Positions 37,900-48,975 of a stretch of DNA of 64,000 bases are shown here, one piece after another (within the stretch, counting starts at the first letter, position 1; every line of letters begins with the position of its first letter). The notes beneath the pieces are model-generated. The model saw only the letters and a program-made list of their open reading frames with translations. It was not told the origin of the DNA and ran no database searches. Source of the stretch: Vitrella brassicaformis CCMP3155 (Eukaryota; Protista; Chromerida); the NCBI GenBank assembly GCA_001179505.1, contig CDMY01000581.1:1-64000 (forward strand). The letters run 5' to 3'. The position numbers were made by a program, and so were the translations under genes.

Positions 37900-40800
37900 A
37901 TGGATTCATCAATCAGCCTCCGTGCGGTGGGCGCTGGGCTTGACCCGCTGAGCGCCCTCAGCAGACAGTTCACCGCCGCAAAGAAGCCGCCGTCTAATGC
38001 CGGCGATGCGGCAAGAGAGCCGACATCGCCCGGAGAAGAAGTGCTGCTCGAGGTAGCCACTGACAGACCGCGCGTGGCCAGGCAGATGGGCAGATGGACA
38101 CACAGGGTGGTGCAGGGCAGGCAGCCGGGGTGTTTGGATGAATCAACGCCTCGTGACACACGCCACACAGACGTTGTGTGATCTTGTCTGTGCCTTGTCT
38201 GCCTGTCTGTCTGTCTGTCTGTCTGTCTGCAGGTAACGTCAGGTGCGACGATGGGTCCGCACTCGTCCTTGCTCAGTGGCCGCACGCCGTCCCACCCTCC
38301 TCCCCCTCCAAGCCCCACATATCCACCCACACCCACACCCATACCTGCACCCGTAACCATGCCGCCACCGCAGCAGCACCACCAGCAGCAGCAGCAGTAT
38401 CAAATGCCGGAGGAAGATCGGCAGCAAACCTCTCAACCTCCCCGTCCGTTGCGTCAGGTCCCGCTGCTGCCTGGCGAGAAGGAGCACATGCGGCTGGAGC
38501 ATGCCCTGCTGTCCATTAGTGGTGGTGGGGTGCTGGACGGACGGCTGGTGCTGACGAGTGGGCGGCTGTGGTTCGAGCTGACAGACGTCCGTGTGCGAAA
38601 GGGGGAGTGGTGGGTGGAGCGGTGTGGGTACCTGGAGGTGCATCTGGGGTCTGTCGACAAGATCGAGGTGAACCCCGAGAGAAGGGGGGTGTCGGGGCGA
38701 CAGAAGGTGCTGCTCAGTGCCGTCACTGACCCACTCGTGCTAGAGGTAGGTAGGTAGGCGATAGATAGGAGGGGAGAGGGAGGCCAGATGGATGGTGGAT
38801 GGCGTCATTCGTTCATCAGGTAACGACTAAGGATGGCCGCAGGCTGCGCTTCATCATCCACGAACCGCGGAAACAGCAGGTCAGTCAGTCATCCCTTTCA
38901 TCGATCTATCCGTCCGCCCGCCCATCCGCTCGTCCATCCATCAGATAGCCCAGGAGGTGTATCGTGTGGCCTTCCCCACCCGGCTGGCGGACGTCTTCGC
39001 CCTCGACCAGCGACGCCAGACATCCAAAAACCACCCGGCGCGCACACACAAGGCGTCTCACGAGGAGACCCCCGAATCAACGGCACTCCAGCCAATGGTG
39101 CATCAGCAGCAGCAGCAGCAGCATGGCGGGCTGGGCGAGAGGGGCTGGGATGCGTGGGGCCACCATCAGGAGGATGAGAGCGGGTGGAGTCTGTATGACG
39201 CTGTCGCCGAGTACAGGAGGATGGGTGTGGAGGAGAACAGCAGGAAGAGGGAAAAGGAGGGAAGTGGTCACGGTCATGGTCTGCCGCCGCCATCCACCAG
39301 GGTAAGAGAGGGAGAGTAAAGGGGTGGCCCTGCTGTGTGTCGTTCATGGCCACCGTTGATGTGTGTCGTGTGTGCAGTTGTGTGTTCGATACACCAATTT
39401 GGACTACTCGTTGTGTGACACGTATCCCCCGGTGTTTGTGGTGCCGTCTTCCATCACTGACGACCAACTCAGACGAGTCAGTCAGGCACTCACTCACTCA
39501 CTCACTCACACACGCACACACAACATAGCCATGGATGGGTGCACGCGTGCGTCAGGTAGCTGCCTTCCGGTCTCGCGGCCGTCTGCCCGTCATGAGCTGG
39601 CGAAACCCATACACAGACGCCACGCTGTGGCGATCAAGGTAGCCAGGGGCAGACACACATGTGCAGGCTGGTGCACCCACTGCACTGGTTTGTGTGAATG
39701 TGTGTGTGTCGCGTCATTTGTGTGCCAGTCAGCCGAAGACGTCTCTGAAGCGGTGTGAGGACGACGAGCTGCTCGTGGCCCACCTGGCGGGCGGCCAAAC
39801 CGACAGGCCCCTCTTGCTCATCGACGCACGACCATTCGCTAACGCCATGGCCAACAGGGTACCCTCCCTCCCCACAGTATATATGCGGCCCATTTTGCGC
39901 ATGTGCGTGCCCACGTATGTGTGTGTAGGCTGGTGGTGCAGGGTGGGAGACTGCGCCGTACTACCGTTGCGCGGTCAAGTATGCGGGCATCCCCAACATC
40001 CACGGTGTGCGTCAGGCCTGGCAGGCCATGGTCGCCGCTGTCAACAAGGGGCTGGACGAAATGATGGAGGAGACCACACTCAATGGGGGTGGGGGCATGG
40101 CTGGGGGTGGGAGCGACATGCAAGCCATGATGAACAGCTATGCCAAATGGGGCACACAGGTACCACACACACAGAGAGAGAGAGGGAATGAGATGGATTG
40201 AGTGTTGTGGTGACCTGTGTATACTCTGCAGGTGGACAGCTCGCATTGGTACGAGTACGTGTGCATCATCCTGCATACGGCATCTGAGATGGTGGACGAG
40301 CTCCACAGCAGCGAGGGGCGTTCGGTCTTCACCCACTGCAGCGACGGGTGGGACCGCACGGCTCAGCTGACCAGTCTGTGCATGATCTGCCTCGACCCCT
40401 ACTACCGCACCATCAGAGGGCTGCTCATACTCATCGAACAAGTAAGTCAGCTTATGAGCAAGTCGTGAGCAACACATACACATGGTGCTTGTGTGTGTCA
40501 ATATATGGCAGGAGTTTCTGTCGTTTGGTCATCGGTTCCACACGCGATGCGGCCATCCGGCGCCCATCGAGTCGAGAGGGCCGCAGGGCGATGATCAACG
40601 CTCGCCAATCTTCATTCAGGTGAGGTACCCCTGCCTCCTTGTGAATGAGACGAACCGGGCCCCGGCCGCCTGCATCGCATTCCTGTTTGTTTGGTGGGCT
40701 GTGTCGTGTCGTGTCGTGTCGTGTTGTGTTGTGTTGTGTGTATGCATCAGTGGTTGGACTGCGTGTATCAGTTGTGGCATCAGCATCCGTGTGCCTTCGA

Positions 40801-41419
40801 GTTCGACGCCTCACTACTCACATGCCTCGCAGAACACGTCTACTCGTGCCAATTCGGCACATTCCTTCTCGACTCCCACAAAGTGAGTGACCCCAATTAA
40901 CCCACACAGACAGACACGCCACACATCAACCAACACATGTGCATGTGCCTCTCCTCTCCCCCCTCTGGTGTAATGTCGTTCAGGAGCGAGAGGACTTCCA
41001 CATCTCCCGCCGCACCCCCTCTCTGTGGCGTCACATCCTGGACCGCACAGACAGCTTCGCCAACCCCTTCTACAACCCTGCTTACTCGGCCACTGGGGAT
41101 GACGCACAACACACTACTGCAGGGGATGGTGTTGGTGTTGGTTTGGGTGAGCCTCTGCGGATCCACGCCAGCCTGCCGTGTATGCGGGTGTGGGGGCAGT
41201 ACTGGTTCAGGTAGGTACTCACACATCAACAGACGAATGACACACCTCGGCCGGGCCATGTGGATGCGTGTGTGTGTTGTGTGTGTGTGTTGAGTTAGGT
41301 ATCATCCGTTGCATGAGTTCTACGAGCACCGGTCCCTTCAGTACATGTATCATGACGCACGTCGGTCCATCACGACACGTATCATGACGCGCGTGGGTCC
41401 ATCACGACACGTATCATGA
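37900..41419 (+). CDS. Myotubularin-related phosphoinositide 3-phosphatase (catalytically intact) with a PH-GRAM-like N-terminal region
   Basis: CDTYPPVFVVP, FRSRGRLPVMSW, LIDARPFANAMANR, active site HCSDGWDRTAQLTSL, LDPYYRTIRG, EFLSFGHRF, QRSPIFIQ|WLDCVYQL, CQFGTFL. Confidence 0.95.
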
Positions 41420-41422
41420 CGC
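41347..41422. repeat. Minisatellite, 2.4 copies of a 32-bp unit, overlapping the myotubularin stop codon
   Basis: GTATCATGACGC(A/G)CGT(C/G)GGTCCATCACGACAC with units starting at 41347, 41379 and 41411. Confidence 0.85.
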
Positions 41423-41546
41423 TGTCCATGTGTATGTCATTGATGTCTGCGATGACTGACTGTCGCCCATAGTGGGGGGGGGGGGCATGTGTGAGCCCAT
41501 TTCGCGTGGGCATTGATGGGCTGTGGTGTGGCGTTGTGTGGACTCG

Positions 41547-42851
41547 TCACTGCTCCACCGCGGTCTTGCCAAACTGCACGTGTTTCTCCTGTTCATCGCA
41601 ATAAAACGGGCAGACACATGCACGTCCACACGCATTGTCCTCCAAATTCGCCCCTCTCAGCTCCATAGCCCTTCTCTTTGCGATTGCCTTTTTGAGAGCG
41701 CCATCGTATCCCTCCTCGTCGTCCTCCACGCAAAATGCCTGTGTTCCCCTGCGGCCGTTCTCCTGCCATTGCGCCACCCACGCCTCACGCACATACCCCT
41801 CTGGATTCGCTGGCCGGTAGTATACACCCCTCACCTGACAGACACCACACGCACACACATACGCCGACGCACACACAGCCATCTCTCTGCTCGTGTCTAC
41901 ATACGCCGGATTGATGCTCTTCGTTTGTGTGGCGCCGGTCCCCTCCGTCCGTCTGCAGTCCACATTCTCGCATCCATTCATGCCTCTGCTCCTCTGCGAG
42001 GGCCTGACGGCGCCACACCAGGGGAGATCTTATCACGCTCACCACCCGTGTCACCCCACCACCTACCTTGGCCTTGTCGAATCCATGCTGTTGCTGCGTG
42101 AAGTAGCGCTGCTGACTGTCGTCGTGTGGATGCCTGGCACACCACCGACGCTGGTACTGATGCCAGGCCACACCGGGCACCGCGGACTGGTACTCCGACA
42201 CGCGAATGTTGGTCTTGTTGAGGTCTATGATGCCCGTCGTGGGGAACGAGGGCTTCGATGCATACTGCTCAGTGAGGTGGTCCAGCTTGTCCAGGGGAGG
42301 CAACACTGCACAAACCACATCATCCTGGGCGATGCCGTCCCCCCTTTGCTGACGTGTTTGTGCCATCTCACCTCCTTCCTTGCGGAGTCGCGCGTTGCTC
42401 TCGCGGCCGAGGCGACGCTTGAGTGCCTTGTCAATGGGACGCCTGACCTTGCCTTAGGGACACACCACATCATACCAAGAAAATGCATTCCCTTTTTGTG
42501 TGAGTGGGCCGCTGCATCGACAGATCTCGCTGCAGTACCTGTGTTGCGGGCGATCTCGAACCTGCGGTCGCGGCCGAGGCGACGCTTGATGGCCTGAACC
42601 ATCCATCCATCCATCCGCAACACAGCACCATTGATTTGATGGCATCTGCTGCCGTTTTCACCCACCTTCAGTCGTGTGAATAGGTCCTCGTCGTCTGAGT
42701 CGTGGGGTCGGAAGATACGATCGAGCATCGCCGCAACATCTGCCTCCGGATCGCCCTTATCGCCCCGCCCACCTGCACCCTTCCCGGCATCTGGTGGTTC
42801 GGGCGAGGAGTCAGACAGTGCGATGTCAAAGTCACGGCCGATACGCGCCAT
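41547..42851 (-). CDS. ApiAP2-type transcription factor with two AP2 domains
   Basis: SAVPGVAWHQYQRRWCARHPHDDSQQRYFTQQQHGFDKAK|ALAEEQR and VRGVYYRP...EAWVAQWQENGRRGTQAFCV...GYDGALKKAIAKRRAME follow the apicomplexan AP2 pattern (GV...W-x-A-x-W...F...G...A...A). Confidence 0.88.
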
Positions 42852-42971
42852 TGTGTCTGCCTCTACGTCAAGAACTCACACAAAGAACGGGCCACAAGGT
42901 AAATTCGCCCGATATGTTTCACGGAATATCATCCGGGTGCTACCTTGTCTCGCAAACAAGCGCTGGAGGCG

Positions 42972-45900
42972 ATGCTGACGGAAGACGATGACGCCGGGCT
43001 CTATGAGAGCCTTCAGCCAGATGACGGGGGCACGCAGAGGGCCGGACTCCCTTGCATCCACTCCTTGAGCGACCTCAGACGACATCTGCCGGGCATGATG
43101 CTCAACGCCTTTGAAGGTGCCAGCCATGATCTGCGCGACGCCGCTCAGAAAAAGCTGCAGACTCTGGTGGATGCGGCAAACGAGGGCAAGACGGTGGGCC
43201 GGATCAAAGGCGTCAAAGAGTACCTGGCCCTCTGCTGCAAGAATCTGAGGTACGAGCATTCGCATAGACCAGCCCAGCGTGGATGCCCGTCTGCCCGTCA
43301 CCCTGGTTCTGTGTGCGGTTGTGCAGGTGTGATGATATCGCGAAGGCTGTTGCGTCCGTGGATTGGAGGGGATATGATAGGGCATATCTATGGGATGCCG
43401 CCTTCGGACACTTCTACCTCAGTGGCAAGAAGGTCAAGTATGCGCAGGAGCGAAAGTGGCACACGACAAAGGATGTCTGGCGTCCCCATCAGATGGTATG
43501 CCGACCTTAACAAGGCGACACCACACCACACGATGGGTGCCTCTGGTATGTCTGGTGACGGTGCAGGCTGAGCTGGCGGAACTCGTGGAGGAAGAGGGCA
43601 AGAAGAAGAACGACGACCGCCTCGCACAGCCATTTCGTGGCCTGCAGGAGCGCTTCACCTTCGACGGTCCTGACCTGCGTGCGAGGCTCGCTGACCTGTG
43701 TGACTCACGTGACGCGCTACTGAAGCCGTGTGAAGAGCAGGGTAAGCATCCATGCGACGGCACTCGTGTCTGCTCGTGAGGGATGTCCAAGTCCGCTGCA
43801 TTTGTGTGTGAATGTCTTCAGGTCGTGCGACGGCGAAGCGTCGAATCTGTGATTTGATTGTGGTCGCTGCCATCGTCCTGGGCACGGGGGCGCTACCTCT
43901 GGGCCTCGATCCGTATGACGAGCAGCTATCCGAATGGGCCGCACACTTCCTCACGGCATTCGCCCAGCAGCCCCTCCACAATGCTGCAGACACCCCCGTC
44001 GCTTGTGGCAGTGCAGACGTCCACATGCCGTCCGCCGAGACCTCTGATGCCAAGCGGTCACGGGAAGCTGACAAGACCAGTGAGGGAGGCCGCCCGAAGA
44101 GACGGAAGGCGCGAGAGGCCTCGTACCCTGTCGAGGTGCGGATGACGGACAGACCATCAGAGTTCTTCCCTCTCGGATCACTTTCCTCCTCGCACAGGAC
44201 CTCGACGATGAGATCGGTGACCCCGACTTCGAAGAAGAGAGTGGCGGTGAGGGATCAGGAGATGAGGGGACGCTTGGCGGTGAGGGCTTCAACACACACA
44301 AGCCCACCTGGGTCATGTCACATGTATCAGCCCAACTCTCTTTTCTCTGTCTGTGGTATGTTTACAGGGCATGAGTCAGGCACTGACCCAACAGCGATTC
44401 CACACAAACTCCGAGCTGCACTCTACGGTACGAAGTGAATGCATGCGCAAGGTTTCATGAATGTACATGTATGTGTGTGTGTGTGTATGTGTGTGTGTGT
44501 GTGTGTGTGCGTCGCTTCTCGGTGCGTGTAGACATGTGGATCATGCACATGATAGCGGTGACTCCGGGAGATTTCGATAAGCGCGCGGCAGACTATACGA
44601 TCCAGACACATCTTCCTCACTTCAAGCACAAGACCATCCGTGGCTAGCAGCACAGCGCCTTTGAAGACGGTACCCACCGACACCGGCCCTTCCATCAAAG
44701 GTCCCACACAGCACACCTACGCTCACTTCAAGTCGTCTCGCTATCGTTCAGGCGTGACCAAATACGCGGGGGCCACACTGCACCAGCTGGGGTTCAAGCG
44801 TCGGGCTCATGGGTGGATATGGTCGAACACCCTCGTGGTCTTCCCGGAGGATTCTGGCAAGCTCACCAGCCTTGCTGGAGGAGATGGACATCCGGTGACG
44901 TCTGATATGGCAACAGGTCAGTGGTCACCCCTTGTCTGTACAGTGATCGCATACTCAGCTGTGTCGTTGCGATTCACCTGTTTCAGGTGATGTGTCATTC
45001 GTGCGGTCAGACGGCCGCAACTGGGAGCTGCACGGTCGCCCGTGTCTGGTGGCAGTTGTGGAAACGCAGCACTGCGCGGAGGTGGTGTGTCGCATGCAGA
45101 TCTTTACCGTCGTCGTTGCAAGTGAGCTGACGCCCCTCATGCATTAAGGAGTGATTGGTTGAATGTTTGTGTGTGGATGACATTCAGCAAGTGGCACAGC
45201 CAGCTGGGCTGTGATTGATCTTCTCAGGAAAGTGGCCCGCAAAGCTCAGCTCGTGGTGAGTGCAATCGAGCAGATGGATGACAGCGGTAGAGTGCCCTTT
45301 CTGGCCTCCTTGTGTGTAGGTGTTCCATTTTGGGGACCGGAACAAGGAGGGCATCGATATCGCGGCGAGGATCGCTGCTGAGCTGGCGGATCTGCACGTA
45401 CCCTTCTTCTGGCTGGGGATCACTCGCAAACAGGCCGAGTCTCCGTGGCGCATAGTAGGCACGACAAGCAGATGGTATACGCTGTGTGTATGTGCATTGC
45501 ATCTGTGTGCAGAAGCGTCGGCTGGTCAATTCGCCGCTCAGCGAAAGGGACAGAAAGGCGATCGAGAGCCGGCTGAAGAAACGTGCCGGTCCAGTGGCTG
45601 AGAACATGAGTGTCATCACGAGGCGAAAGCTTCAGCAAGAGGACACTCAGGTCAGGGCAGAGTTGAGATGTAGAGGTGTTTCCCACGTGGCTGAGTGAAC
45701 ATCGCTTGTCAGGTGTGGCCATTCTTGGCACACCAATTGCAGGGCATGCTGGACTCAGGCGAGAAGACGAAGCTGAATGTAAGCCATTCTGTCGCGATCA
45801 CGACACAGACAGGCAACAGCATTTGTACATTTATGTGTCAGACGGTGCTAGACGCGGTGCCCATTGAGGAGCTCACTCCTTTTTTTGCCAAGATTGTGGA

Positions 45901-46162
45901 AAAGCGACTCATCGCGGCTCGTAAGACATCTAGCACACACACCAGCATCTGTGTGATCCGGCTATGGTGTTAGTGTGATTCATTGACAGGAAAAGGTGTG
46001 CAGCTTGATGCGGGCAGACCCGCATTGTCCGCGGTCCCGCAGCAAGTGAGGCGACTCTTGGTCGGCATCCTAGAGGACCCCAAGGCGGCTGAGCACGCCA
46101 CAAAGATCCTCGAAAGCCATGATGTGCTTGATCATTTTGGGCTACCAAGACCCCCAGCATAG
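42972..46162 (+). CDS. Divergent Spo11/DNA topoisomerase VI subunit A-like protein with a long unique N-terminal region
   Basis: Phase-consistent exons 44532-44639, 44752-44916, 44987-45121, 45188-45255, 45320-45454 and 45513 onward give a winged-helix KRAADY (Tyr at 44594), LHQLGFKRRAHGWIW, TOPRIM VAVVET, VFHFGDRNKEGIDIA, FWLGIT, PLSERDRKAIESRL and HQLQGMLDSGEKTKL. The 3' end is uncertain and may extend to 46530. Confidence 0.72.
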
Positions 46163-46986
46163 ACACCCCGAACCATACCAACAACACATTCATCGAGTTC
46201 GTCACTCTGGTGCGCGTGAGGCAGGGAGGGAGGGAGGGAGGGAAGGAGTGAGACCGCACCGCAGCCTAGCAATGTGTGACCACATCTGTCTCTCTTCTCT
46301 CTCTGTCTGTGGGGTGTGTGTGTGTGCAGGAGGTTGAGCTGGACGAGGGCGGTGCCAGTGATGATGCATCTCAGAGGCTGTGTCGCATACCCGCCTGCTG
46401 CTGCGCGGCGACATATCGCCTGCGGCCTCTGTTCAATGCGTCGGCCCTCACGCACCTCCACCACCACAACGGCCGCAACAAGAGCAGTAGCGGCCAAGAG
46501 AGGCAGCAGCCCGTACATACGGACAGCTGAGTGATAAGTAGGGCTGGTTAGTCGCTGCCTGCCTGCATCTTAAGATATCATGTCAAGGGGACGACAGACA
46601 GAGAGAGAGGCTTGTTGCAAGTGAAAGGAAGCATTAGAGTGCTTTATCAGTGAGTGCCTCACAGACAGAGATGGTCTTCTGTGTTGAGTCCTGCGTGTGT
46701 TCCGTGCTTTTCATCCTCCCGTTGTGTCCTTGGGCTCGACGTTGTTTGTTTGGGCTCTTCCAAGCTCGAAGGGCCGTCCAAACCGCGTCATGGCCAGAGG
46801 GGACAACGTGGGATGAAGAGCATGATACCATTGCCAACCAAGTGTAAACGGAAGACTCAGGAGATTGACGACCGATTATCATTCATTATCGTATGTACAC
46901 ACAACACAGTCAGTGTCCCTGTGTGTGTATCGGTCCTCACATCACAGACAGCTTTATCATGCCATGCATCATATATGCTGGCTCAT

Positions 46987-48975
46987 CTATCTCTGCACAA
47001 GAGCTCTGTGCAGCTGCTGGGCCATCCACTGCTCGGCCGTGAACGACACATCCATCGTCTTCTTGCCTGACACACAACACACACAACACACACGAGACAC
47101 ATGAGGCGCACACAGTAAGTAGCACACATGAGGGTTCACGGTCACCTTGCAAAATTCTGAATGCCTCACGGTAGGTCAGCAGTGCCAGGTACTCACTCAT
47201 CTTGACGCGCTGCAGAAGGCACAAACAACGCGACAACACTCCATGCGGCCAATCAGCGCCTTTTGATTTCCATCAAAGCTTTGTTTACCATTGCATTCAC
47301 GGCTGCCGTGTCCATGTTTGTCGCATCTTTGCCATCCGTGTCTCTCTCACCCCACCACACCACCGCCCTCCTGCTCACATCGACCTCGCCCGTGCTGCCT
47401 GCACTCTTCTCGAGCCGCTTCCGCCGCTTGGCCACTCGCTTGACGGCTTTGGTCAGCTGCGGGTCCTTCTCGTACTGCGAGTTGGCCATGATGCCCGTCA
47501 AGGTCTGCTCCCATATCGCCCACACACCACGCCACGCCTGCATAGTGGGTGGCGACACACAGAACGAAACCGACACAATCCCATCACATGGCCCGCAACT
47601 TCACTCCGCCTGCCTACCTCAAGTGCGGTAAGCATGGGTGTCTCGTCGATAAGTTTCCGGTGCAGCAGCCGAGACAGCTCGATCACCTCCTTGGGCGGGG
47701 TGTTGGGCAGGGTGCCTGGCGGAGGGGCGGGGGGCAGTACAACGCCATCAGCTGAGGGAGATGTGATGTTGTGTGGGTTGGCGGGCGCGTGCAGCTCTAT
47801 CGGCACTGTCCGCCACGACCTGTCCCACTTGGGGTGGAACCTAGCAATGAATACAACACACAGACAGGTAGATATAATGAATGGTGTCTCTATGTTGTCT
47901 GTCTGGGTGTGGTGTGGGTCGCGGTGCTCACTCACTTTGCCAGCCGCTCAGCGGTGCCGATTCGGCAGCTCCATGACATCTCGTGTCTTGGGGGCGACGT
48001 GTACCCATAGACCGTCAGCAGATGGGCGTTGGAGTGAGGCCCATACCACCCCAGCAGCTCCTCACCCGCAGCCACGTCACGGGTGGCCCGCACCCTCATT
48101 ACATCGATGTCACGTATGAACTCCCAGAGGACATTCTGCCTCGCCAGCCCATAGTCGTTGAGGAAGTCTATCACCGGGATCATTACCAGCTCGCCGTCCA
48201 CCATGAAGCTGCGGGAAGAGTGAAGCGCCACTGACTTGAAGAAGCTCTCCAGGAGGAAGCTGTCGCCCAGTAGGGAGCGGTCCGTGTCAGATACGACTCT
48301 GTTGTAGGAATCCAAGACGCCGCGCCTAAGCGTCGCCGCCCACTCGCCCTCGGGCGACCTCGATAGGTGAGTCGTCAATAGTGTCTCGTTGCCATCCTCC
48401 ACAGTGAAAGGGACGGCCGGCGTGTCAAGTGCCCGCAGATCCTTCAGCCAGACCTTCAGCCGCTCACACGGGGAGACGAGAGGGACAGCAGATGACGGCG
48501 GTGGTCTCTGTGTGGATGATGATATCGATGGTCTCCCACCTGTCCTGCACCCGCCGCTCAGCGCGTACGTGAGGAAGGCAATCACCACAGTCACCGGTCC
48601 CAGAGGCATCCTGTCGCCATCCCTCGCCACAGCAGCAGCGAGGGACGACTGCTGGGCAAGCCGGCTGACCGTCAGCATGAGCTTCTTGGGCACCTCGATG
48701 ACCGTCGTCCCCTTCGCGAGAGGCGCAGTGGTGCGGAGGCCGCGCTCCTGCGTGCTGCTTGGTGGTGTGATCTCCACATCTGGGTGCAGATAGCCATCGT
48801 TGTCCATGAGCAAGCCGCGGAAAGGGCCGATGTCATGCGGATCATACGGCTCTGACGCATCACTGTCGATGGCACGAAAGGAGGCGAAGACCCAGTCGAC
48901 AGCGTCCCGCCATTGGTGAGCGGCCAGGGCAGCCAGCACAACCACACTCACGAGGAATGAGGTCGGCAGCTTCAT
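46987..48975 (-). CDS. Rubisco-LSMT/SETD3-like SET-domain protein with an N-terminal signal peptide
   Basis: MKLPTSFLVSVVVLAALAA signal, RGLRTTAPLAKGTTVIEVPKKLMLT, SRSF...MIPVIDFLND, ATRDVAAGEELLGWYGPHSNAHLLTVYGY. Confidence 0.85.

What the first reader, a model, noticed from the sequence alone, without database searches (positions are those of the whole stretch)
42972..46162. Hidden, highly divergent Spo11/Topo VI-A paralog with a large novel N-terminal domain
Seen: no single ORF shows it, but six phase-consistent exons rebuild the full Spo11/Top6A domain order. The winged helix reads LRAALYDMWIMHMIAVTPGDFDKRAADY, with Tyr (44594-44596) at the position of the catalytic Tyr of the R-D-x-Y-Y motif. 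It is followed by LHQLGFKRRAHGWIW, TOPRIM VAVVET (Glu 45061), VVATSGTASWAVIDLL in place of the TGKGxPD loop, FGDRNKEGIDIA (DxD changed to D-x-N, 45335-45343), FWLGIT, PLSERD and QLQGMLDSGEKTKL. About 350 residues of unrecognised helical and acidic sequence precede it. Established: Spo11 makes meiotic double-strand breaks through this Tyr and needs the TOPRIM Glu and DxD for Mg2+. Inference: an extra, fast-evolving paralog distinct from canonical Spo11-1/2/3, either an altered-chemistry nuclease, a catalytically weakened partner subunit, or a fusion supplying its own TopoVIB-like or regulatory module. It shares a 120-nt divergent promoter with an ApiAP2 factor, which hints at stage-specific, perhaps sexual, co-regulation.
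Basis: partly seen in the sequence, partly recalled or inferred. Interest (0 to 1): 0.8.

Follow-up and report, generated by a model that had tools for sequence, protein, structure and literature searches.

The report
Divergent Spo11-like gene, frame-breaking splice
This is a real, transcribed gene of the alga Vitrella for a very divergent relative of the DNA-cutting enzyme Spo11/topoisomerase VI-A, one of a small family private to this alga that sits head to head with AP2 DNA-binding genes, but the messenger RNA on record is spliced so that the reading frame breaks before the enzyme part.

Summary
RNA-derived contigs show 15 GT..AG introns on the + strand.

The C-terminal half belongs to the Spo11/Top6A Toprim family:
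- The window's exons match, in order, a family of at least 7 paralogous loci in this genome.
- One paralog, read from a transcript contig, passes Pfam PF21180 (30.1 bits against a cut-off of 24.1).
- Its model finds M. mazei and M. jannaschii Top6A and yeast Spo11 first.

The winged-helix/Tyr part is not shown. An R-x-x-x-Y motif is conserved in five copies, but no profile or fold matches.

All three RNA-like runs use the donor at 44701, so the frame stops at 44645-44647 after 397 codons. The Spo11-like frame nevertheless stays open for 318 spliced codons with coding periodicity.

This copy is the most divergent member. It keeps Arg, Tyr, Glu and the first Asp, and it has lost the KGxP..R loop.

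The AP2 neighbour is confirmed, and the pairing recurs at five loci.

The scan had already found this family on other DNA of the same genome (s1-235838, s1-199304, s1-199303, s1-201631).

The parts
42972..46162 (+). Span of the full-length (productive) coding model: 15 coding exons, 714 codons, if the donor at 44640 is used
   Evidence: Exon junctions from RNA contigs. ORFs of the spliced sequence computed in local scripts.
42972..44647 (+). ORF A of the mRNA actually seen: exons E1-E7, 397 codons, stop TAG 44645-44647. It holds the N-terminal region and the R-x-x-x-Y helix only.
   Evidence: GC1/2/3 = 0.67/0.45/0.68.
43822..44135 (+). Exon E4. It is the best conserved N-terminal exon of the family (..G.lP.GLDP..LS.W..) and carries a basic RPKRRKAR stretch, possibly a nuclear localisation signal (inference).
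   Evidence: tblastn matches to C421 and C466. No Pfam or Atlas match.
44532..44639 (+). Exon E7 as needed for the full-length protein. It carries Arg 44582-44584 and Tyr 44594-44596 (K-R-A-A-D-Y).
   Evidence: R-x-x-x-Y is conserved in five copies (A5). The coding periodicity fits only this frame.
44640..44700 (+). 61 nt kept in every RNA contig seen. It starts with GT and ends with AG. Keeping it shifts the frame and gives the stop at 44645-44647.
   Evidence: Joint 44698->44750 (cut +2) in X1, X2 and X8; no joint from 44639 listed. Sequence read.
44701..44751 (+). The intron actually removed: 51 nt, GTCCCA..CAG
44752..44916 (+). Exon E8 (..GATLHQLGFKRRAHGWIW..ED..), the second half of the presumed winged helix
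   Evidence: Conserved in C421, C415, C466 and C396. No Pfam or PDB match.
44987..45121 (+). Exon E9, the first Toprim strand, with Glu 45061-45063 (LVAVVET)
   Evidence: hhalign to a paralog-only profile at the collinear place, P = 0.0032..
45190..45216 (+). Degenerate loop S-G-T-A-S-W-A-V-I in exon E10, where paralogs have KG(x)P(x)(D/E)A(V/L)(R) and Spo11 has G-x-G-x-P-D-x-x-T-R
   Evidence: Family alignment. Invariant paralog columns lost here: K497S and P500A. The Arg equivalent to yeast R266 is absent.
45320..45454 (+). Exon E11: F-G-D-R-N-K-E-G-I-D-I-A (Asp 45335-45337, Asn 45341-45343) and FWLGIT
   Evidence: BLASTP to the C477 paralog, E = 5e-9. Own-genome search finds 5 paralogs.
45513..45920 (+). 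Exons E12-E14 (PLSERD.., W..L..QL..ML...K.KLN, ..F..IVEKRL), the C-terminal part of the Toprim domain
   Evidence: hhalign at collinear places, P = 0.025, 0.015 and 0.02.
45990..46208 (+). Exon E15 with the stop at 46160-46162. A 3'-UTR intron of about 46210-46329 follows.
42852..42971 (.). 120-nt spacer between the two divergent start codons
41547..42851 (-). Head-to-head neighbour gene: a 282-residue protein with two AP2 domains (P0007)
   Evidence: P0007 begins with the ORF at 42851. Pfam AP2 34.9 bits against a cut-off of 33.3, two stretches. It is carried by RNA contigs L024 and L025.

Best explanation
The locus is a real, transcribed, 16-exon nuclear gene of Vitrella brassicaformis. It is the most divergent member of a family of Spo11/topoisomerase VI-A-like genes private to this alga. 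Each full member lies head to head with a gene for a protein with two AP2 domains.

The full-length product would have 714 residues:
- about 360 family-specific N-terminal residues;
- a short helical segment with Arg377 and Tyr381, four residues apart as in Spo11;
- a Top6A/Spo11-type Toprim domain with Glu476 and Asp524.

Such a protein would be expected to work as a dimer in which the Tyr of one subunit attacks DNA beside the Mg2+ site of the other (inferred from the family). The AP2 partner is a candidate targeting subunit (inferred from the recurring gene pair).

This copy differs from its paralogs in two ways:
- It has lost the KGxP..R DNA-contact loop. Its second Asp is Asn.
- In all RNA on record, a 61-nt piece (44640-44700) stays in the mRNA. 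Translation from the ATG then ends after 397 residues, before the Toprim domain.

The downstream frame is still intact and looks coding. The frame-preserving splice (donor 44640) must therefore be used at some level or stage, or was used until recently. I take it as a weakened or regulated member of the family, not an active canonical Spo11.
For: Gene structure: 15 GT..AG joints appear in RNA-like contigs of three runs, and the DNA run X6 is unspliced.

Toprim identity of the family:
- The C477 paralog, read from a transcript contig, hits PF21180 at E = 5.7e-7, 30.1 bits over a cut-off of 24.1, covering profile positions 4-159 of 170.
- The best PDB sequence hit is M. mazei Top6A.
- The AlphaFold model (pLDDT 64) finds M. 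mazei Top6A at E = 2.3e-6, 1D3Y at 4e-4 and yeast Spo11 8URQ at 1.4e-2.
- The nearest ESM-Atlas clusters carry PF21180.

Link of this gene to the family, exon by exon and by reference:
- E11: BLASTP 5e-9.
- E9, E12, E13 and E14: each aligns at the collinear place of a paralog-only profile, P = 0.0032, 0.025, 0.015 and 0.02.
- A local script with the spliced model gives 36% identity over 207 residues, E = 5e-27.

Family and AP2 pairing.

R-x-x-x-Y is conserved in five copies. The Tyr-to-Glu spacing is 95, against 98 in yeast Spo11 (Y135, E233; PMC11746154).

Frame: the stop at 44645-44647 follows from the observed donor. E7 has coding periodicity only in the upstream frame. E8-E15 stay open for 318 codons, P about 5.6e-6.

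Loop loss: 13 of the 40 columns invariant in the paralogs are changed in this copy, among them K497S, P500A, D526N and H528E.
Against: - No Pfam hit on any single exon of this gene. The six-frame Pfam scan of the genome hits only the canonical locus on C542.
- The winged-helix homology is unproven. There is no TP6A_N hit on any copy. The family profile does not find the canonical Spo11 exon above noise. The PDB profile search gives only EutK at E = 0.2. The fold attempt failed, with pLDDT 44. The Gln that is invariant nine residues after the Tyr in Spo11/Top6A is absent.
- The productive splice has not been seen. Contigs drop rare variants, so its absence is not proven either.
- Physical or functional coupling to the AP2 protein is pure inference.
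- The big representative search with E7/E8 found neither a self hit nor an orthologue.
Confidence: 0.72

Rival explanations
1. Regulated unproductive splicing. The gene is fully functional. In ordinary culture most mRNA keeps the 61-nt piece and is non-productive. The frame-preserving splice (donor 44640, or a second removal of 44640-44700, which itself has GT..AG ends) is switched on in a particular stage, for instance a sexual or zoospore stage, giving the 714-residue protein.
For: - The downstream frame is intact over 9 exons with coding periodicity.
- All 14 other introns are cleanly removed in the same contigs.
- Paralogs join the Tyr exon to the next exon in frame at the equivalent place.
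- The chemistry residues Arg, Tyr, Glu and first Asp are kept.
Against: - The productive junction is not seen in any of three RNA-like runs.
- No stage-resolved data were available.
- The loss of the KGxP..R loop argues against a fully active enzyme.
Confidence: 0.35
2. Young transcribed pseudogene. The proper donor has weakened (GTGGCT), a downstream donor took over, and the Spo11-like half is no longer translated and has begun to decay. The motif losses would be the first signs.
For: - The frame break is present in all RNA contigs.
- This is the most divergent copy, 32-34% identical to the others, which share 39-63% among themselves.
- Conserved motif positions are lost.
- The family shows birth and death. 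C415 has an in-frame stop and no AP2 gene, C587 is a fragment, and C477 lacks the N-terminal and Tyr exons.
Against: - 318 codons are open with no frameshift across 8 junctions, and GC1/2/3 equals that of the translated upstream half.
- 27 of the 40 family-invariant columns are kept.
Confidence: 0.3
3. The functional product is the 397-residue N-terminal protein alone: the family-specific domain plus the Tyr helix. It would act as a regulator or competitor of its full-length paralogs. The downstream part would be a long 3' UTR.
For: - This is the only protein that the observed mRNA encodes from its first ATG.
- The N-terminal exons are conserved in the family.
Against: - It does not explain why the downstream frame is intact and coding-like.
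- The stop lies in the middle of the presumed winged helix.
Confidence: 0.12
4. It is the ordinary Spo11 orthologue of the species, or the Spo11 resemblance is a chance set of short motifs.
For: Pfam finds nothing on single exons.
Against: - Canonical Spo11 (TP6A_N 39 bits; Toprim; the annotated partial protein P0003) lies on contig C542.
- The family's Toprim identity rests on Pfam, fold and language-model evidence.
- Five exons of this gene are collinear with the family.
Confidence: 0.03

Closest known systems
Spo11 / topoisomerase VI subunit A (type IIB topoisomerase A subunits; Pfam PF21180 Toprim plus PF04406 TP6A_N)
   Same: - Toprim domain of the Top6A/Spo11 type at family level.
- Glu and first Asp of the metal site.
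- Arg four residues before a Tyr.
- Tyr-to-Glu spacing of 95, against 98 in yeast.
- Domain order: Tyr helix, then Toprim.
   Different: - No detectable TP6A_N homology.
- The Gln invariant at Tyr+9 is absent.
- The G-x-G-x-P-D-x-x-T-R loop is lost in this copy, though kept in the paralogs as KGxPxDAVR.
- About 360 extra N-terminal residues.
- At least 7 loci in one genome.
- Not an orthologue of SPO11-1, -2 or -3.
Plant SPO11-1/SPO11-2 (two diverged paralogs that both are needed for meiotic breaks; Allen and Maxwell 2024, PMC11302465)
   Same: Several diverged Spo11-type paralogs in one genome. This raises the possibility that a degenerate copy serves as a partner subunit.
   Different: - Plant paralogs are ancient, widely conserved and keep all invariant residues.
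- This family is private to Vitrella, as far as the searches reach.
- This copy's mRNA is frame-broken.
Bacterial Top6A-like Toprim nucleases of defence systems (JetD/MksG of Wadjet/MksBEFG; DUF2399 proteins)
   Same: A Top6A-type Toprim domain used outside topoisomerase or meiosis. The paralog gives a weak DUF2399 match.
   Different: - The DUF2399 score of 17.7 bits is below the cut-off of 23.4 and below the PF21180 score.
- The gene is eukaryotic, intron-rich and nuclear.
- There are no SMC-type partner genes; the partner is an AP2 gene.
HNH-AP2 homing endonucleases of phages and bacteria (AP2 DNA-binding domain joined to a nuclease)
   Same: An AP2 DNA-binding module associated with a DNA-cutting module.
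   Different: - Here the two are separate, divergently transcribed genes.
- The nuclease is of the Top6A type, not HNH.
- No evidence of mobility: no terminal repeats, and similarity between copies ends at the two genes.

Membership tests
Spo11 / Topo VI-A | Toprim domain matching the TOP6A-Spo11_Toprim profile (PF21180) | tested here: met
   - Met by the C477 paralog: 30.1 bits over a cut-off of 24.1, E = 5.7e-7.
- Fold search puts Top6A first, E = 2.3e-6.
- This gene is tied to that paralog exon by exon.
- Single exons of this gene give no Pfam hit by themselves.
- The joined protein was not sent to Pfam.
Spo11 / Topo VI-A | Invariant Toprim Glu (yeast E233) and first Asp of DxD (yeast D288) | tested here: met
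   Glu 45061-45063 and Asp 45335-45337. Both align with the paralogs' Glu and Asp and with the Glu of M. mazei Top6A in the paralog alignment.
Spo11 / Topo VI-A | Second Asp of DxD (yeast D290) | tested here: not met
   It is Asn at 45341-45343; all four paralogs have Asp. Yeast D290N has little effect on recombination and the residue is not strictly conserved (PMC11746154), so this is a weak criterion.
Spo11 / Topo VI-A | Invariant Arg of the G-x-G-x-P-D-x-x-T-R loop (yeast R266) | tested here: not met
   This copy reads S-G-T-A-S-W-A-V-I, with Ile at the Arg place. Three of four paralogs keep KGxPx(D/E)A(V/L)R.
Spo11 / Topo VI-A | Winged-helix (5Y-CAP) domain matching TP6A_N (PF04406) | tested here: inconclusive
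   - No hit for this gene or for any paralog piece.
- The family profile finds only EutK in the PDB, E = 0.2.
- The family profile does not find the canonical Spo11 exon above noise.
- The fold attempt had pLDDT 44 and is unusable.
- The pieces are short and split by introns, so a miss is not proof.
Spo11 / Topo VI-A | Catalytic Tyr with Arg four residues before it on the same helix (yeast R131, Y135) | tested here: inconclusive
   R-x-x-x-Y is present (44582-44596) and conserved in five copies. The spacing to the Toprim Glu is 95, against 98 in yeast (PMC11746154). The invariant Gln at Tyr+9 is absent. Catalysis cannot be tested here.
Spo11 / Topo VI-A | Orthology to SPO11-1, SPO11-2 or SPO11-3/Top6A | tested here: not met
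   The canonical gene lies on C542. hhalign of the family against canonical P0003 gives only P = 0.002 over 78 columns. No phylogeny was built, because too few outgroup sequences could be fetched.
Spo11 / Topo VI-A | Works with a Topo VIB or VIB-like partner | not tested
   Earlier notes of the scan list Topo VIB-like genes elsewhere in this genome. No link to this gene was examined.
JetD / MksG / DUF2399 Toprim nucleases | Profile match above the curated cut-off | tested here: not met
   PF09664 scores 17.7 bits against a cut-off of 23.4 on the paralog, weaker than PF21180.
AP2/ERF (ApiAP2) DNA-binding proteins (the neighbour gene) | AP2 domain above the Pfam cut-off | tested here: met
   P0007: 34.9 bits against 33.3, two stretches. 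The partners at C477 and C421 score 47.5 and 63.1 bits.

The most novel reading that the evidence does not exclude
The recurring head-to-head pairs encode a two-part, sequence-targeted DNA-breaking machine. The AP2 protein would choose the site, and the Spo11-like protein would make a covalent Tyr-linked double-strand break there. In this copy an alternative splice (61 nt kept or removed) would act as the on/off switch. It would be a programmable, developmentally gated break system in a free-living relative of apicomplexan parasites, or the remains of a new kind of selfish element.
Probability: 0.12. Interest if true: 0.85.

Novelty: new variant of a known kind. Interest (0 to 1): 0.55.

Why it matters
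Spo11/Top6A proteins are known as one to three conserved paralogs per eukaryote, used for meiotic breaks or as topoisomerase VI (PMC11302465).

Vitrella instead carries a private, fast-evolving family of at least seven loci. Its members have a long novel N-terminus, and five of the loci have an AP2 gene head to head. My paper searches found no description of this.

If the pairs act together, they would link the main transcription-factor family of apicomplexans and chromerids to a DNA-cutting enzyme.

This copy adds two facts to what the scan already had on the family:
- It has lost the invariant DNA-contact loop but keeps the chemistry residues.
- Its mRNA on record is frame-broken by a 61-nt piece with intron-like ends.

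This makes it either a splicing-gated gene or a snapshot of gene death in the family. It also shows that a gene model drawn from that RNA would end at the stop in exon 7; whether the public annotation holds a model here could not be checked, and the one big search found none covering exon 8.

Tried and rejected
Steps that led nowhere:
- Pfam on ten exon or ORF pieces of this gene gave nothing relevant.
- PDB sequence searches with E11 and E9 gave only chance hits.
- The one big representative search used the read-through 44562-44987. It found no self hit and no orthologue. It found only two bacterial Big_2-repeat proteins, whose scores are sums of weak repeats. I reject that match as chance.
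- A word search with the canonical Spo11 exon returned only the partial Vitrella Spo11, P0003. I could therefore not assemble a broad Spo11 alignment or build a tree.
- A word search with the paralog alignment A1 returned only P0004. No relatives outside Vitrella turned up in the 157-499 residue range.
- An exact-match scan of metagenome contigs for an E11 pattern found nothing.
- Transcript contigs of the AP2 partners (L024-L027) stop 19-37 nt before the Spo11-like genes. No by-reference spliced copy of this gene could be had.
- The PDB profile search with A3 found nothing.
- For the winged-helix piece, Pfam, a PDB profile, AlphaFold (pLDDT 44) and a local HMM against the canonical locus were all uninformative.
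- The Atlas search with exon E4 gave no usable hit.

Readings rejected:
- An assembly frameshift. RNA and DNA contigs agree with the window, with no differing letters or indels.
- A recent transposon. Similarity between copies ends at the two genes, with no terminal repeats.

A joined model was built only inside local scripts, to find reading frames and to compare with loci already fetched.
Full report
**Organism and setting.** The window is contig C581 of a 72.7-Mb assembly in 1064 contigs. Database names of proteins encoded nearby, and earlier notes of the scan, give Vitrella brassicaformis CCMP3155.

**Gene structure.** Of the runs that hold the stretch, three (X1, X2, X8) give spliced contigs and one (X6) gives unspliced DNA-like pieces. 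They define these introns on the + strand:
- 43250-43326, 43496-43566, 43742-43821, 44136-44197, 44280-44367
- 44428-44531, 44701-44751, 44917-44986, 45122-45187, 45256-45319
- 45455-45512, 45651-45712, 45779-45841, 45921-45989
- about 46210-46329, in the 3' UTR

The 14 introns inside the coding span read GT..AG as placed. The 3'-UTR one reads GT..AG once the cut is shifted by one base (my reading). The gene therefore has 16 exons, not six. The longest contig (4503 nt, X8) starts at 42942 and runs more than 2 kb past 46500. There it most likely overlaps the 3' end of a convergent minus-strand gene.

All quoted strings and coordinates are right. Two of the junctions implied by the strings are the real ones.

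The decisive intron is not. With that donor the spliced RNA has two long frames:
- ORF A runs from ATG 42972 to the stop at 44645-44647, 397 codons.
- ORF B is open from 44562 to 46159, 365 codons, one base out of phase. It has no ATG until late in exon 8.

The 61 nt between the two donors (44640-44700) begin with GT and end with AG. The seen form can therefore be described as use of a downstream donor, or as retention of a small intron next to a second one.

**Which frame is coding.**
- GC at codon positions 1/2/3 is 0.67/0.45/0.68 in ORF A and 0.65/0.44/0.67 in exons 8-15 of ORF B.
- Exon 7 shows this pattern only in the ORF A frame (0.51/0.38/0.68). In the ORF B frame it is 0.41/0.63/0.63.
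- Exons 8-15 are open for 318 codons, while the other two frames have 10 stops each. P is about 5.6e-6, and 0 of 20,000 shuffles were open.

So the coding path goes from the ORF A frame in exon 7 to the ORF B frame in exon 8, which only the donor at 44640 achieves. In the paralogs the Tyr exon is joined in frame to the next exon at the equivalent place.

**Is it Spo11/Top6A-like?** Single exons give no Pfam or PDB match. The six-frame Pfam scan of the genome hits only the canonical Spo11 locus on contig C542.

The link comes through paralogs.
- Exon 11 finds five further loci in the same genome, and a longer query finds a sixth. They are C477, C421, C396, C415, C466 and C587.
- A word search with their alignment returned a 150-residue protein (P0004). 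Its transcript contig L012 is the spliced C477 copy.
- The stop-free stretch L012:1396-2040 hits PF21180 (TOP6A-Spo11_Toprim) at 30.1 bits, over the cut-off of 24.1, E = 5.7e-7, covering nearly the whole profile. DUF2399 and generic Toprim score lower.
- Its best PDB sequence hit is M. mazei Top6A.
- Its AlphaFold model (pLDDT 64, pTM 0.54) finds M. mazei Top6A (E = 2.3e-6), M. jannaschii Top6A (4e-4) and the yeast Spo11 core complex (1.4e-2) ahead of primases and RecR.
- The nearest ESM-Atlas clusters carry PF21180.

This gene is tied to that family exon by exon, by reference.
- E11 gives BLASTP E = 5e-9.
- E9, E12, E13 and E14 each align at the expected collinear place of a profile made from paralogs only, with P = 0.0032, 0.025, 0.015 and 0.02.
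- In a local script the spliced model matches L012 at 36% identity over 207 residues, E = 5e-27.

The joined protein was not sent to any search, family or fold tool.

**The Tyr domain.** Five copies share R-x-x-x-Y in the exon before the Toprim part: KRAADY here, and HREVRY, HREVQY, NRSVVY and RRQLGY in the others.
- In yeast Spo11, R131 and Y135 sit on one helix with the same spacing, and both matter for function (PMC11746154).
- Tyr381 to Glu476 is 95 residues, against 98 in yeast.

Against this:
- No TP6A_N hit was obtained for any copy.
- The family profile finds nothing significant in the PDB or at the canonical Spo11 locus.
- The invariant Gln nine residues after the Tyr is missing.
- The fold attempt failed.

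The winged-helix assignment therefore remains an inference from position and motif.

**State of this copy.** It is 32-34% identical to the other copies over the Toprim part, while they share 39-63% among themselves. Of the 40 columns invariant in four paralogs it keeps 27. The 13 changes include K497S and P500A in the KGxP loop, and D526N and H528E after the first Asp. The Arg that follows the loop, invariant in Spo11/Top6A as yeast R266, is Ile here.

Arg377, Tyr381, Glu476 and Asp524 are kept. The loss of the DNA-contact loop is the stronger sign of altered or weakened function.

**The AP2 neighbour and the family.** The minus-strand neighbour is P0007, 282 residues. It is annotated as uncharacterised, is present in RNA contigs, and has two AP2 domains (34.9 bits against 33.3). 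Its ATG is 120 nt from the ATG of this gene.

The same head-to-head arrangement is found at C477, C421, C396 and C466. Similarity between loci ends at the two genes. The other copies are incomplete:
- C477 lacks the N-terminal and Tyr exons.
- C415 is a partial copy without an AP2 gene, with an in-frame stop.
- C587 is a fragment of about 700 nt.

So the pair has been duplicated as a unit and copies are being lost.

**N-terminal region.** The N-terminal 360 residues include an acidic run in exon 5 and a basic RPKRRKAR stretch in exon 4. They match nothing. Exons 1, 3 and 4 have counterparts in the full-length paralogs.

**Earlier notes of the scan.** Read after the above was done, they report the same private family and the recurring AP2 pairing from other windows. 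They also note that the Tyr domain matches nothing known. They agree with my results.

**Literature.** I found no paper describing the family.

**Verdict.**
- The gene is a genuine, divergent Spo11/Top6A-type paralog with a novel N-terminus and an AP2 partner.
- It is one of a family. Its Tyr domain is unproven, and its metal-site change is probably harmless while its DNA-contact loop is gone.
- The only mRNA form on record breaks the frame before the enzyme domain.
- Whether that is a splicing switch or the start of gene death cannot be decided from contigs.

Noticed in passing
L002-L005 (G000:C542:16000-22100): The canonical Spo11 locus shows three TP6A_N exon matches about 1.1-1.2 kb apart, and duplicated Toprim exons separated by runs of N. 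This is either a tandem duplication of Spo11 exons or an assembly artefact. The public protein P0003 is only a 169-residue partial model.
   Followed up: no
window 44754-44915: Exon 8 (..WIWSNTLVVFPEDSGKLTSLAGGDG..) resembles the bacterial Big_2 Ig-like repeat (..VTWSSSN..V..D..GKVTA..GG..). This gave E = 1e-6 against a protein with many such repeats. I take it as chance, inflated by summed repeats.
   Followed up: partly
window 46210-46400: The 3' UTR holds a 120-nt intron rich in GT repeats. In run X8 alone, a 37-nt skip (46352->46390) with TG..TA ends appears. It is probably a repeat-length difference or an assembly collapse, not splicing.
   Followed up: no
window 47932-48975 (- strand): The convergent downstream ORF of 347 residues looks like a SET-domain (Rubisco LSMT-type) methyltransferase, judged by eye. 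The 4.5-kb RNA contig of run X8 probably joins the two genes through overlapping 3' ends.
   Followed up: no
P0008 (221 aa, on a contig of 84,035 bases): An annotated Vitrella protein resembles the N-terminal half of the AP2 partners P0005 and P0006 but has no AP2 domain. It may mark one more, degraded, copy of the gene pair at a locus I did not visit.
   Followed up: no
L020:4540-4560 (C396 copy): The donor after the exon-8 equivalent reads G|GCAAG. If the exon boundary is conserved, this suggests a GC-AG intron.
   Followed up: no
L012 (transcript contig, 2224 nt): One assembled transcript carries the C477 Toprim-only copy on one strand and its AP2 partner on the other, with overlapping 5' ends. 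The first in-frame ATG of the Toprim copy lies after the Toprim Glu, so its product (P0004, 150 residues) would lack that residue.
   Followed up: partly
L024 / window about 38000-41500: A myotubularin-related gene (699-residue product in the RNA contig) lies convergent to the AP2 gene.
   Followed up: no
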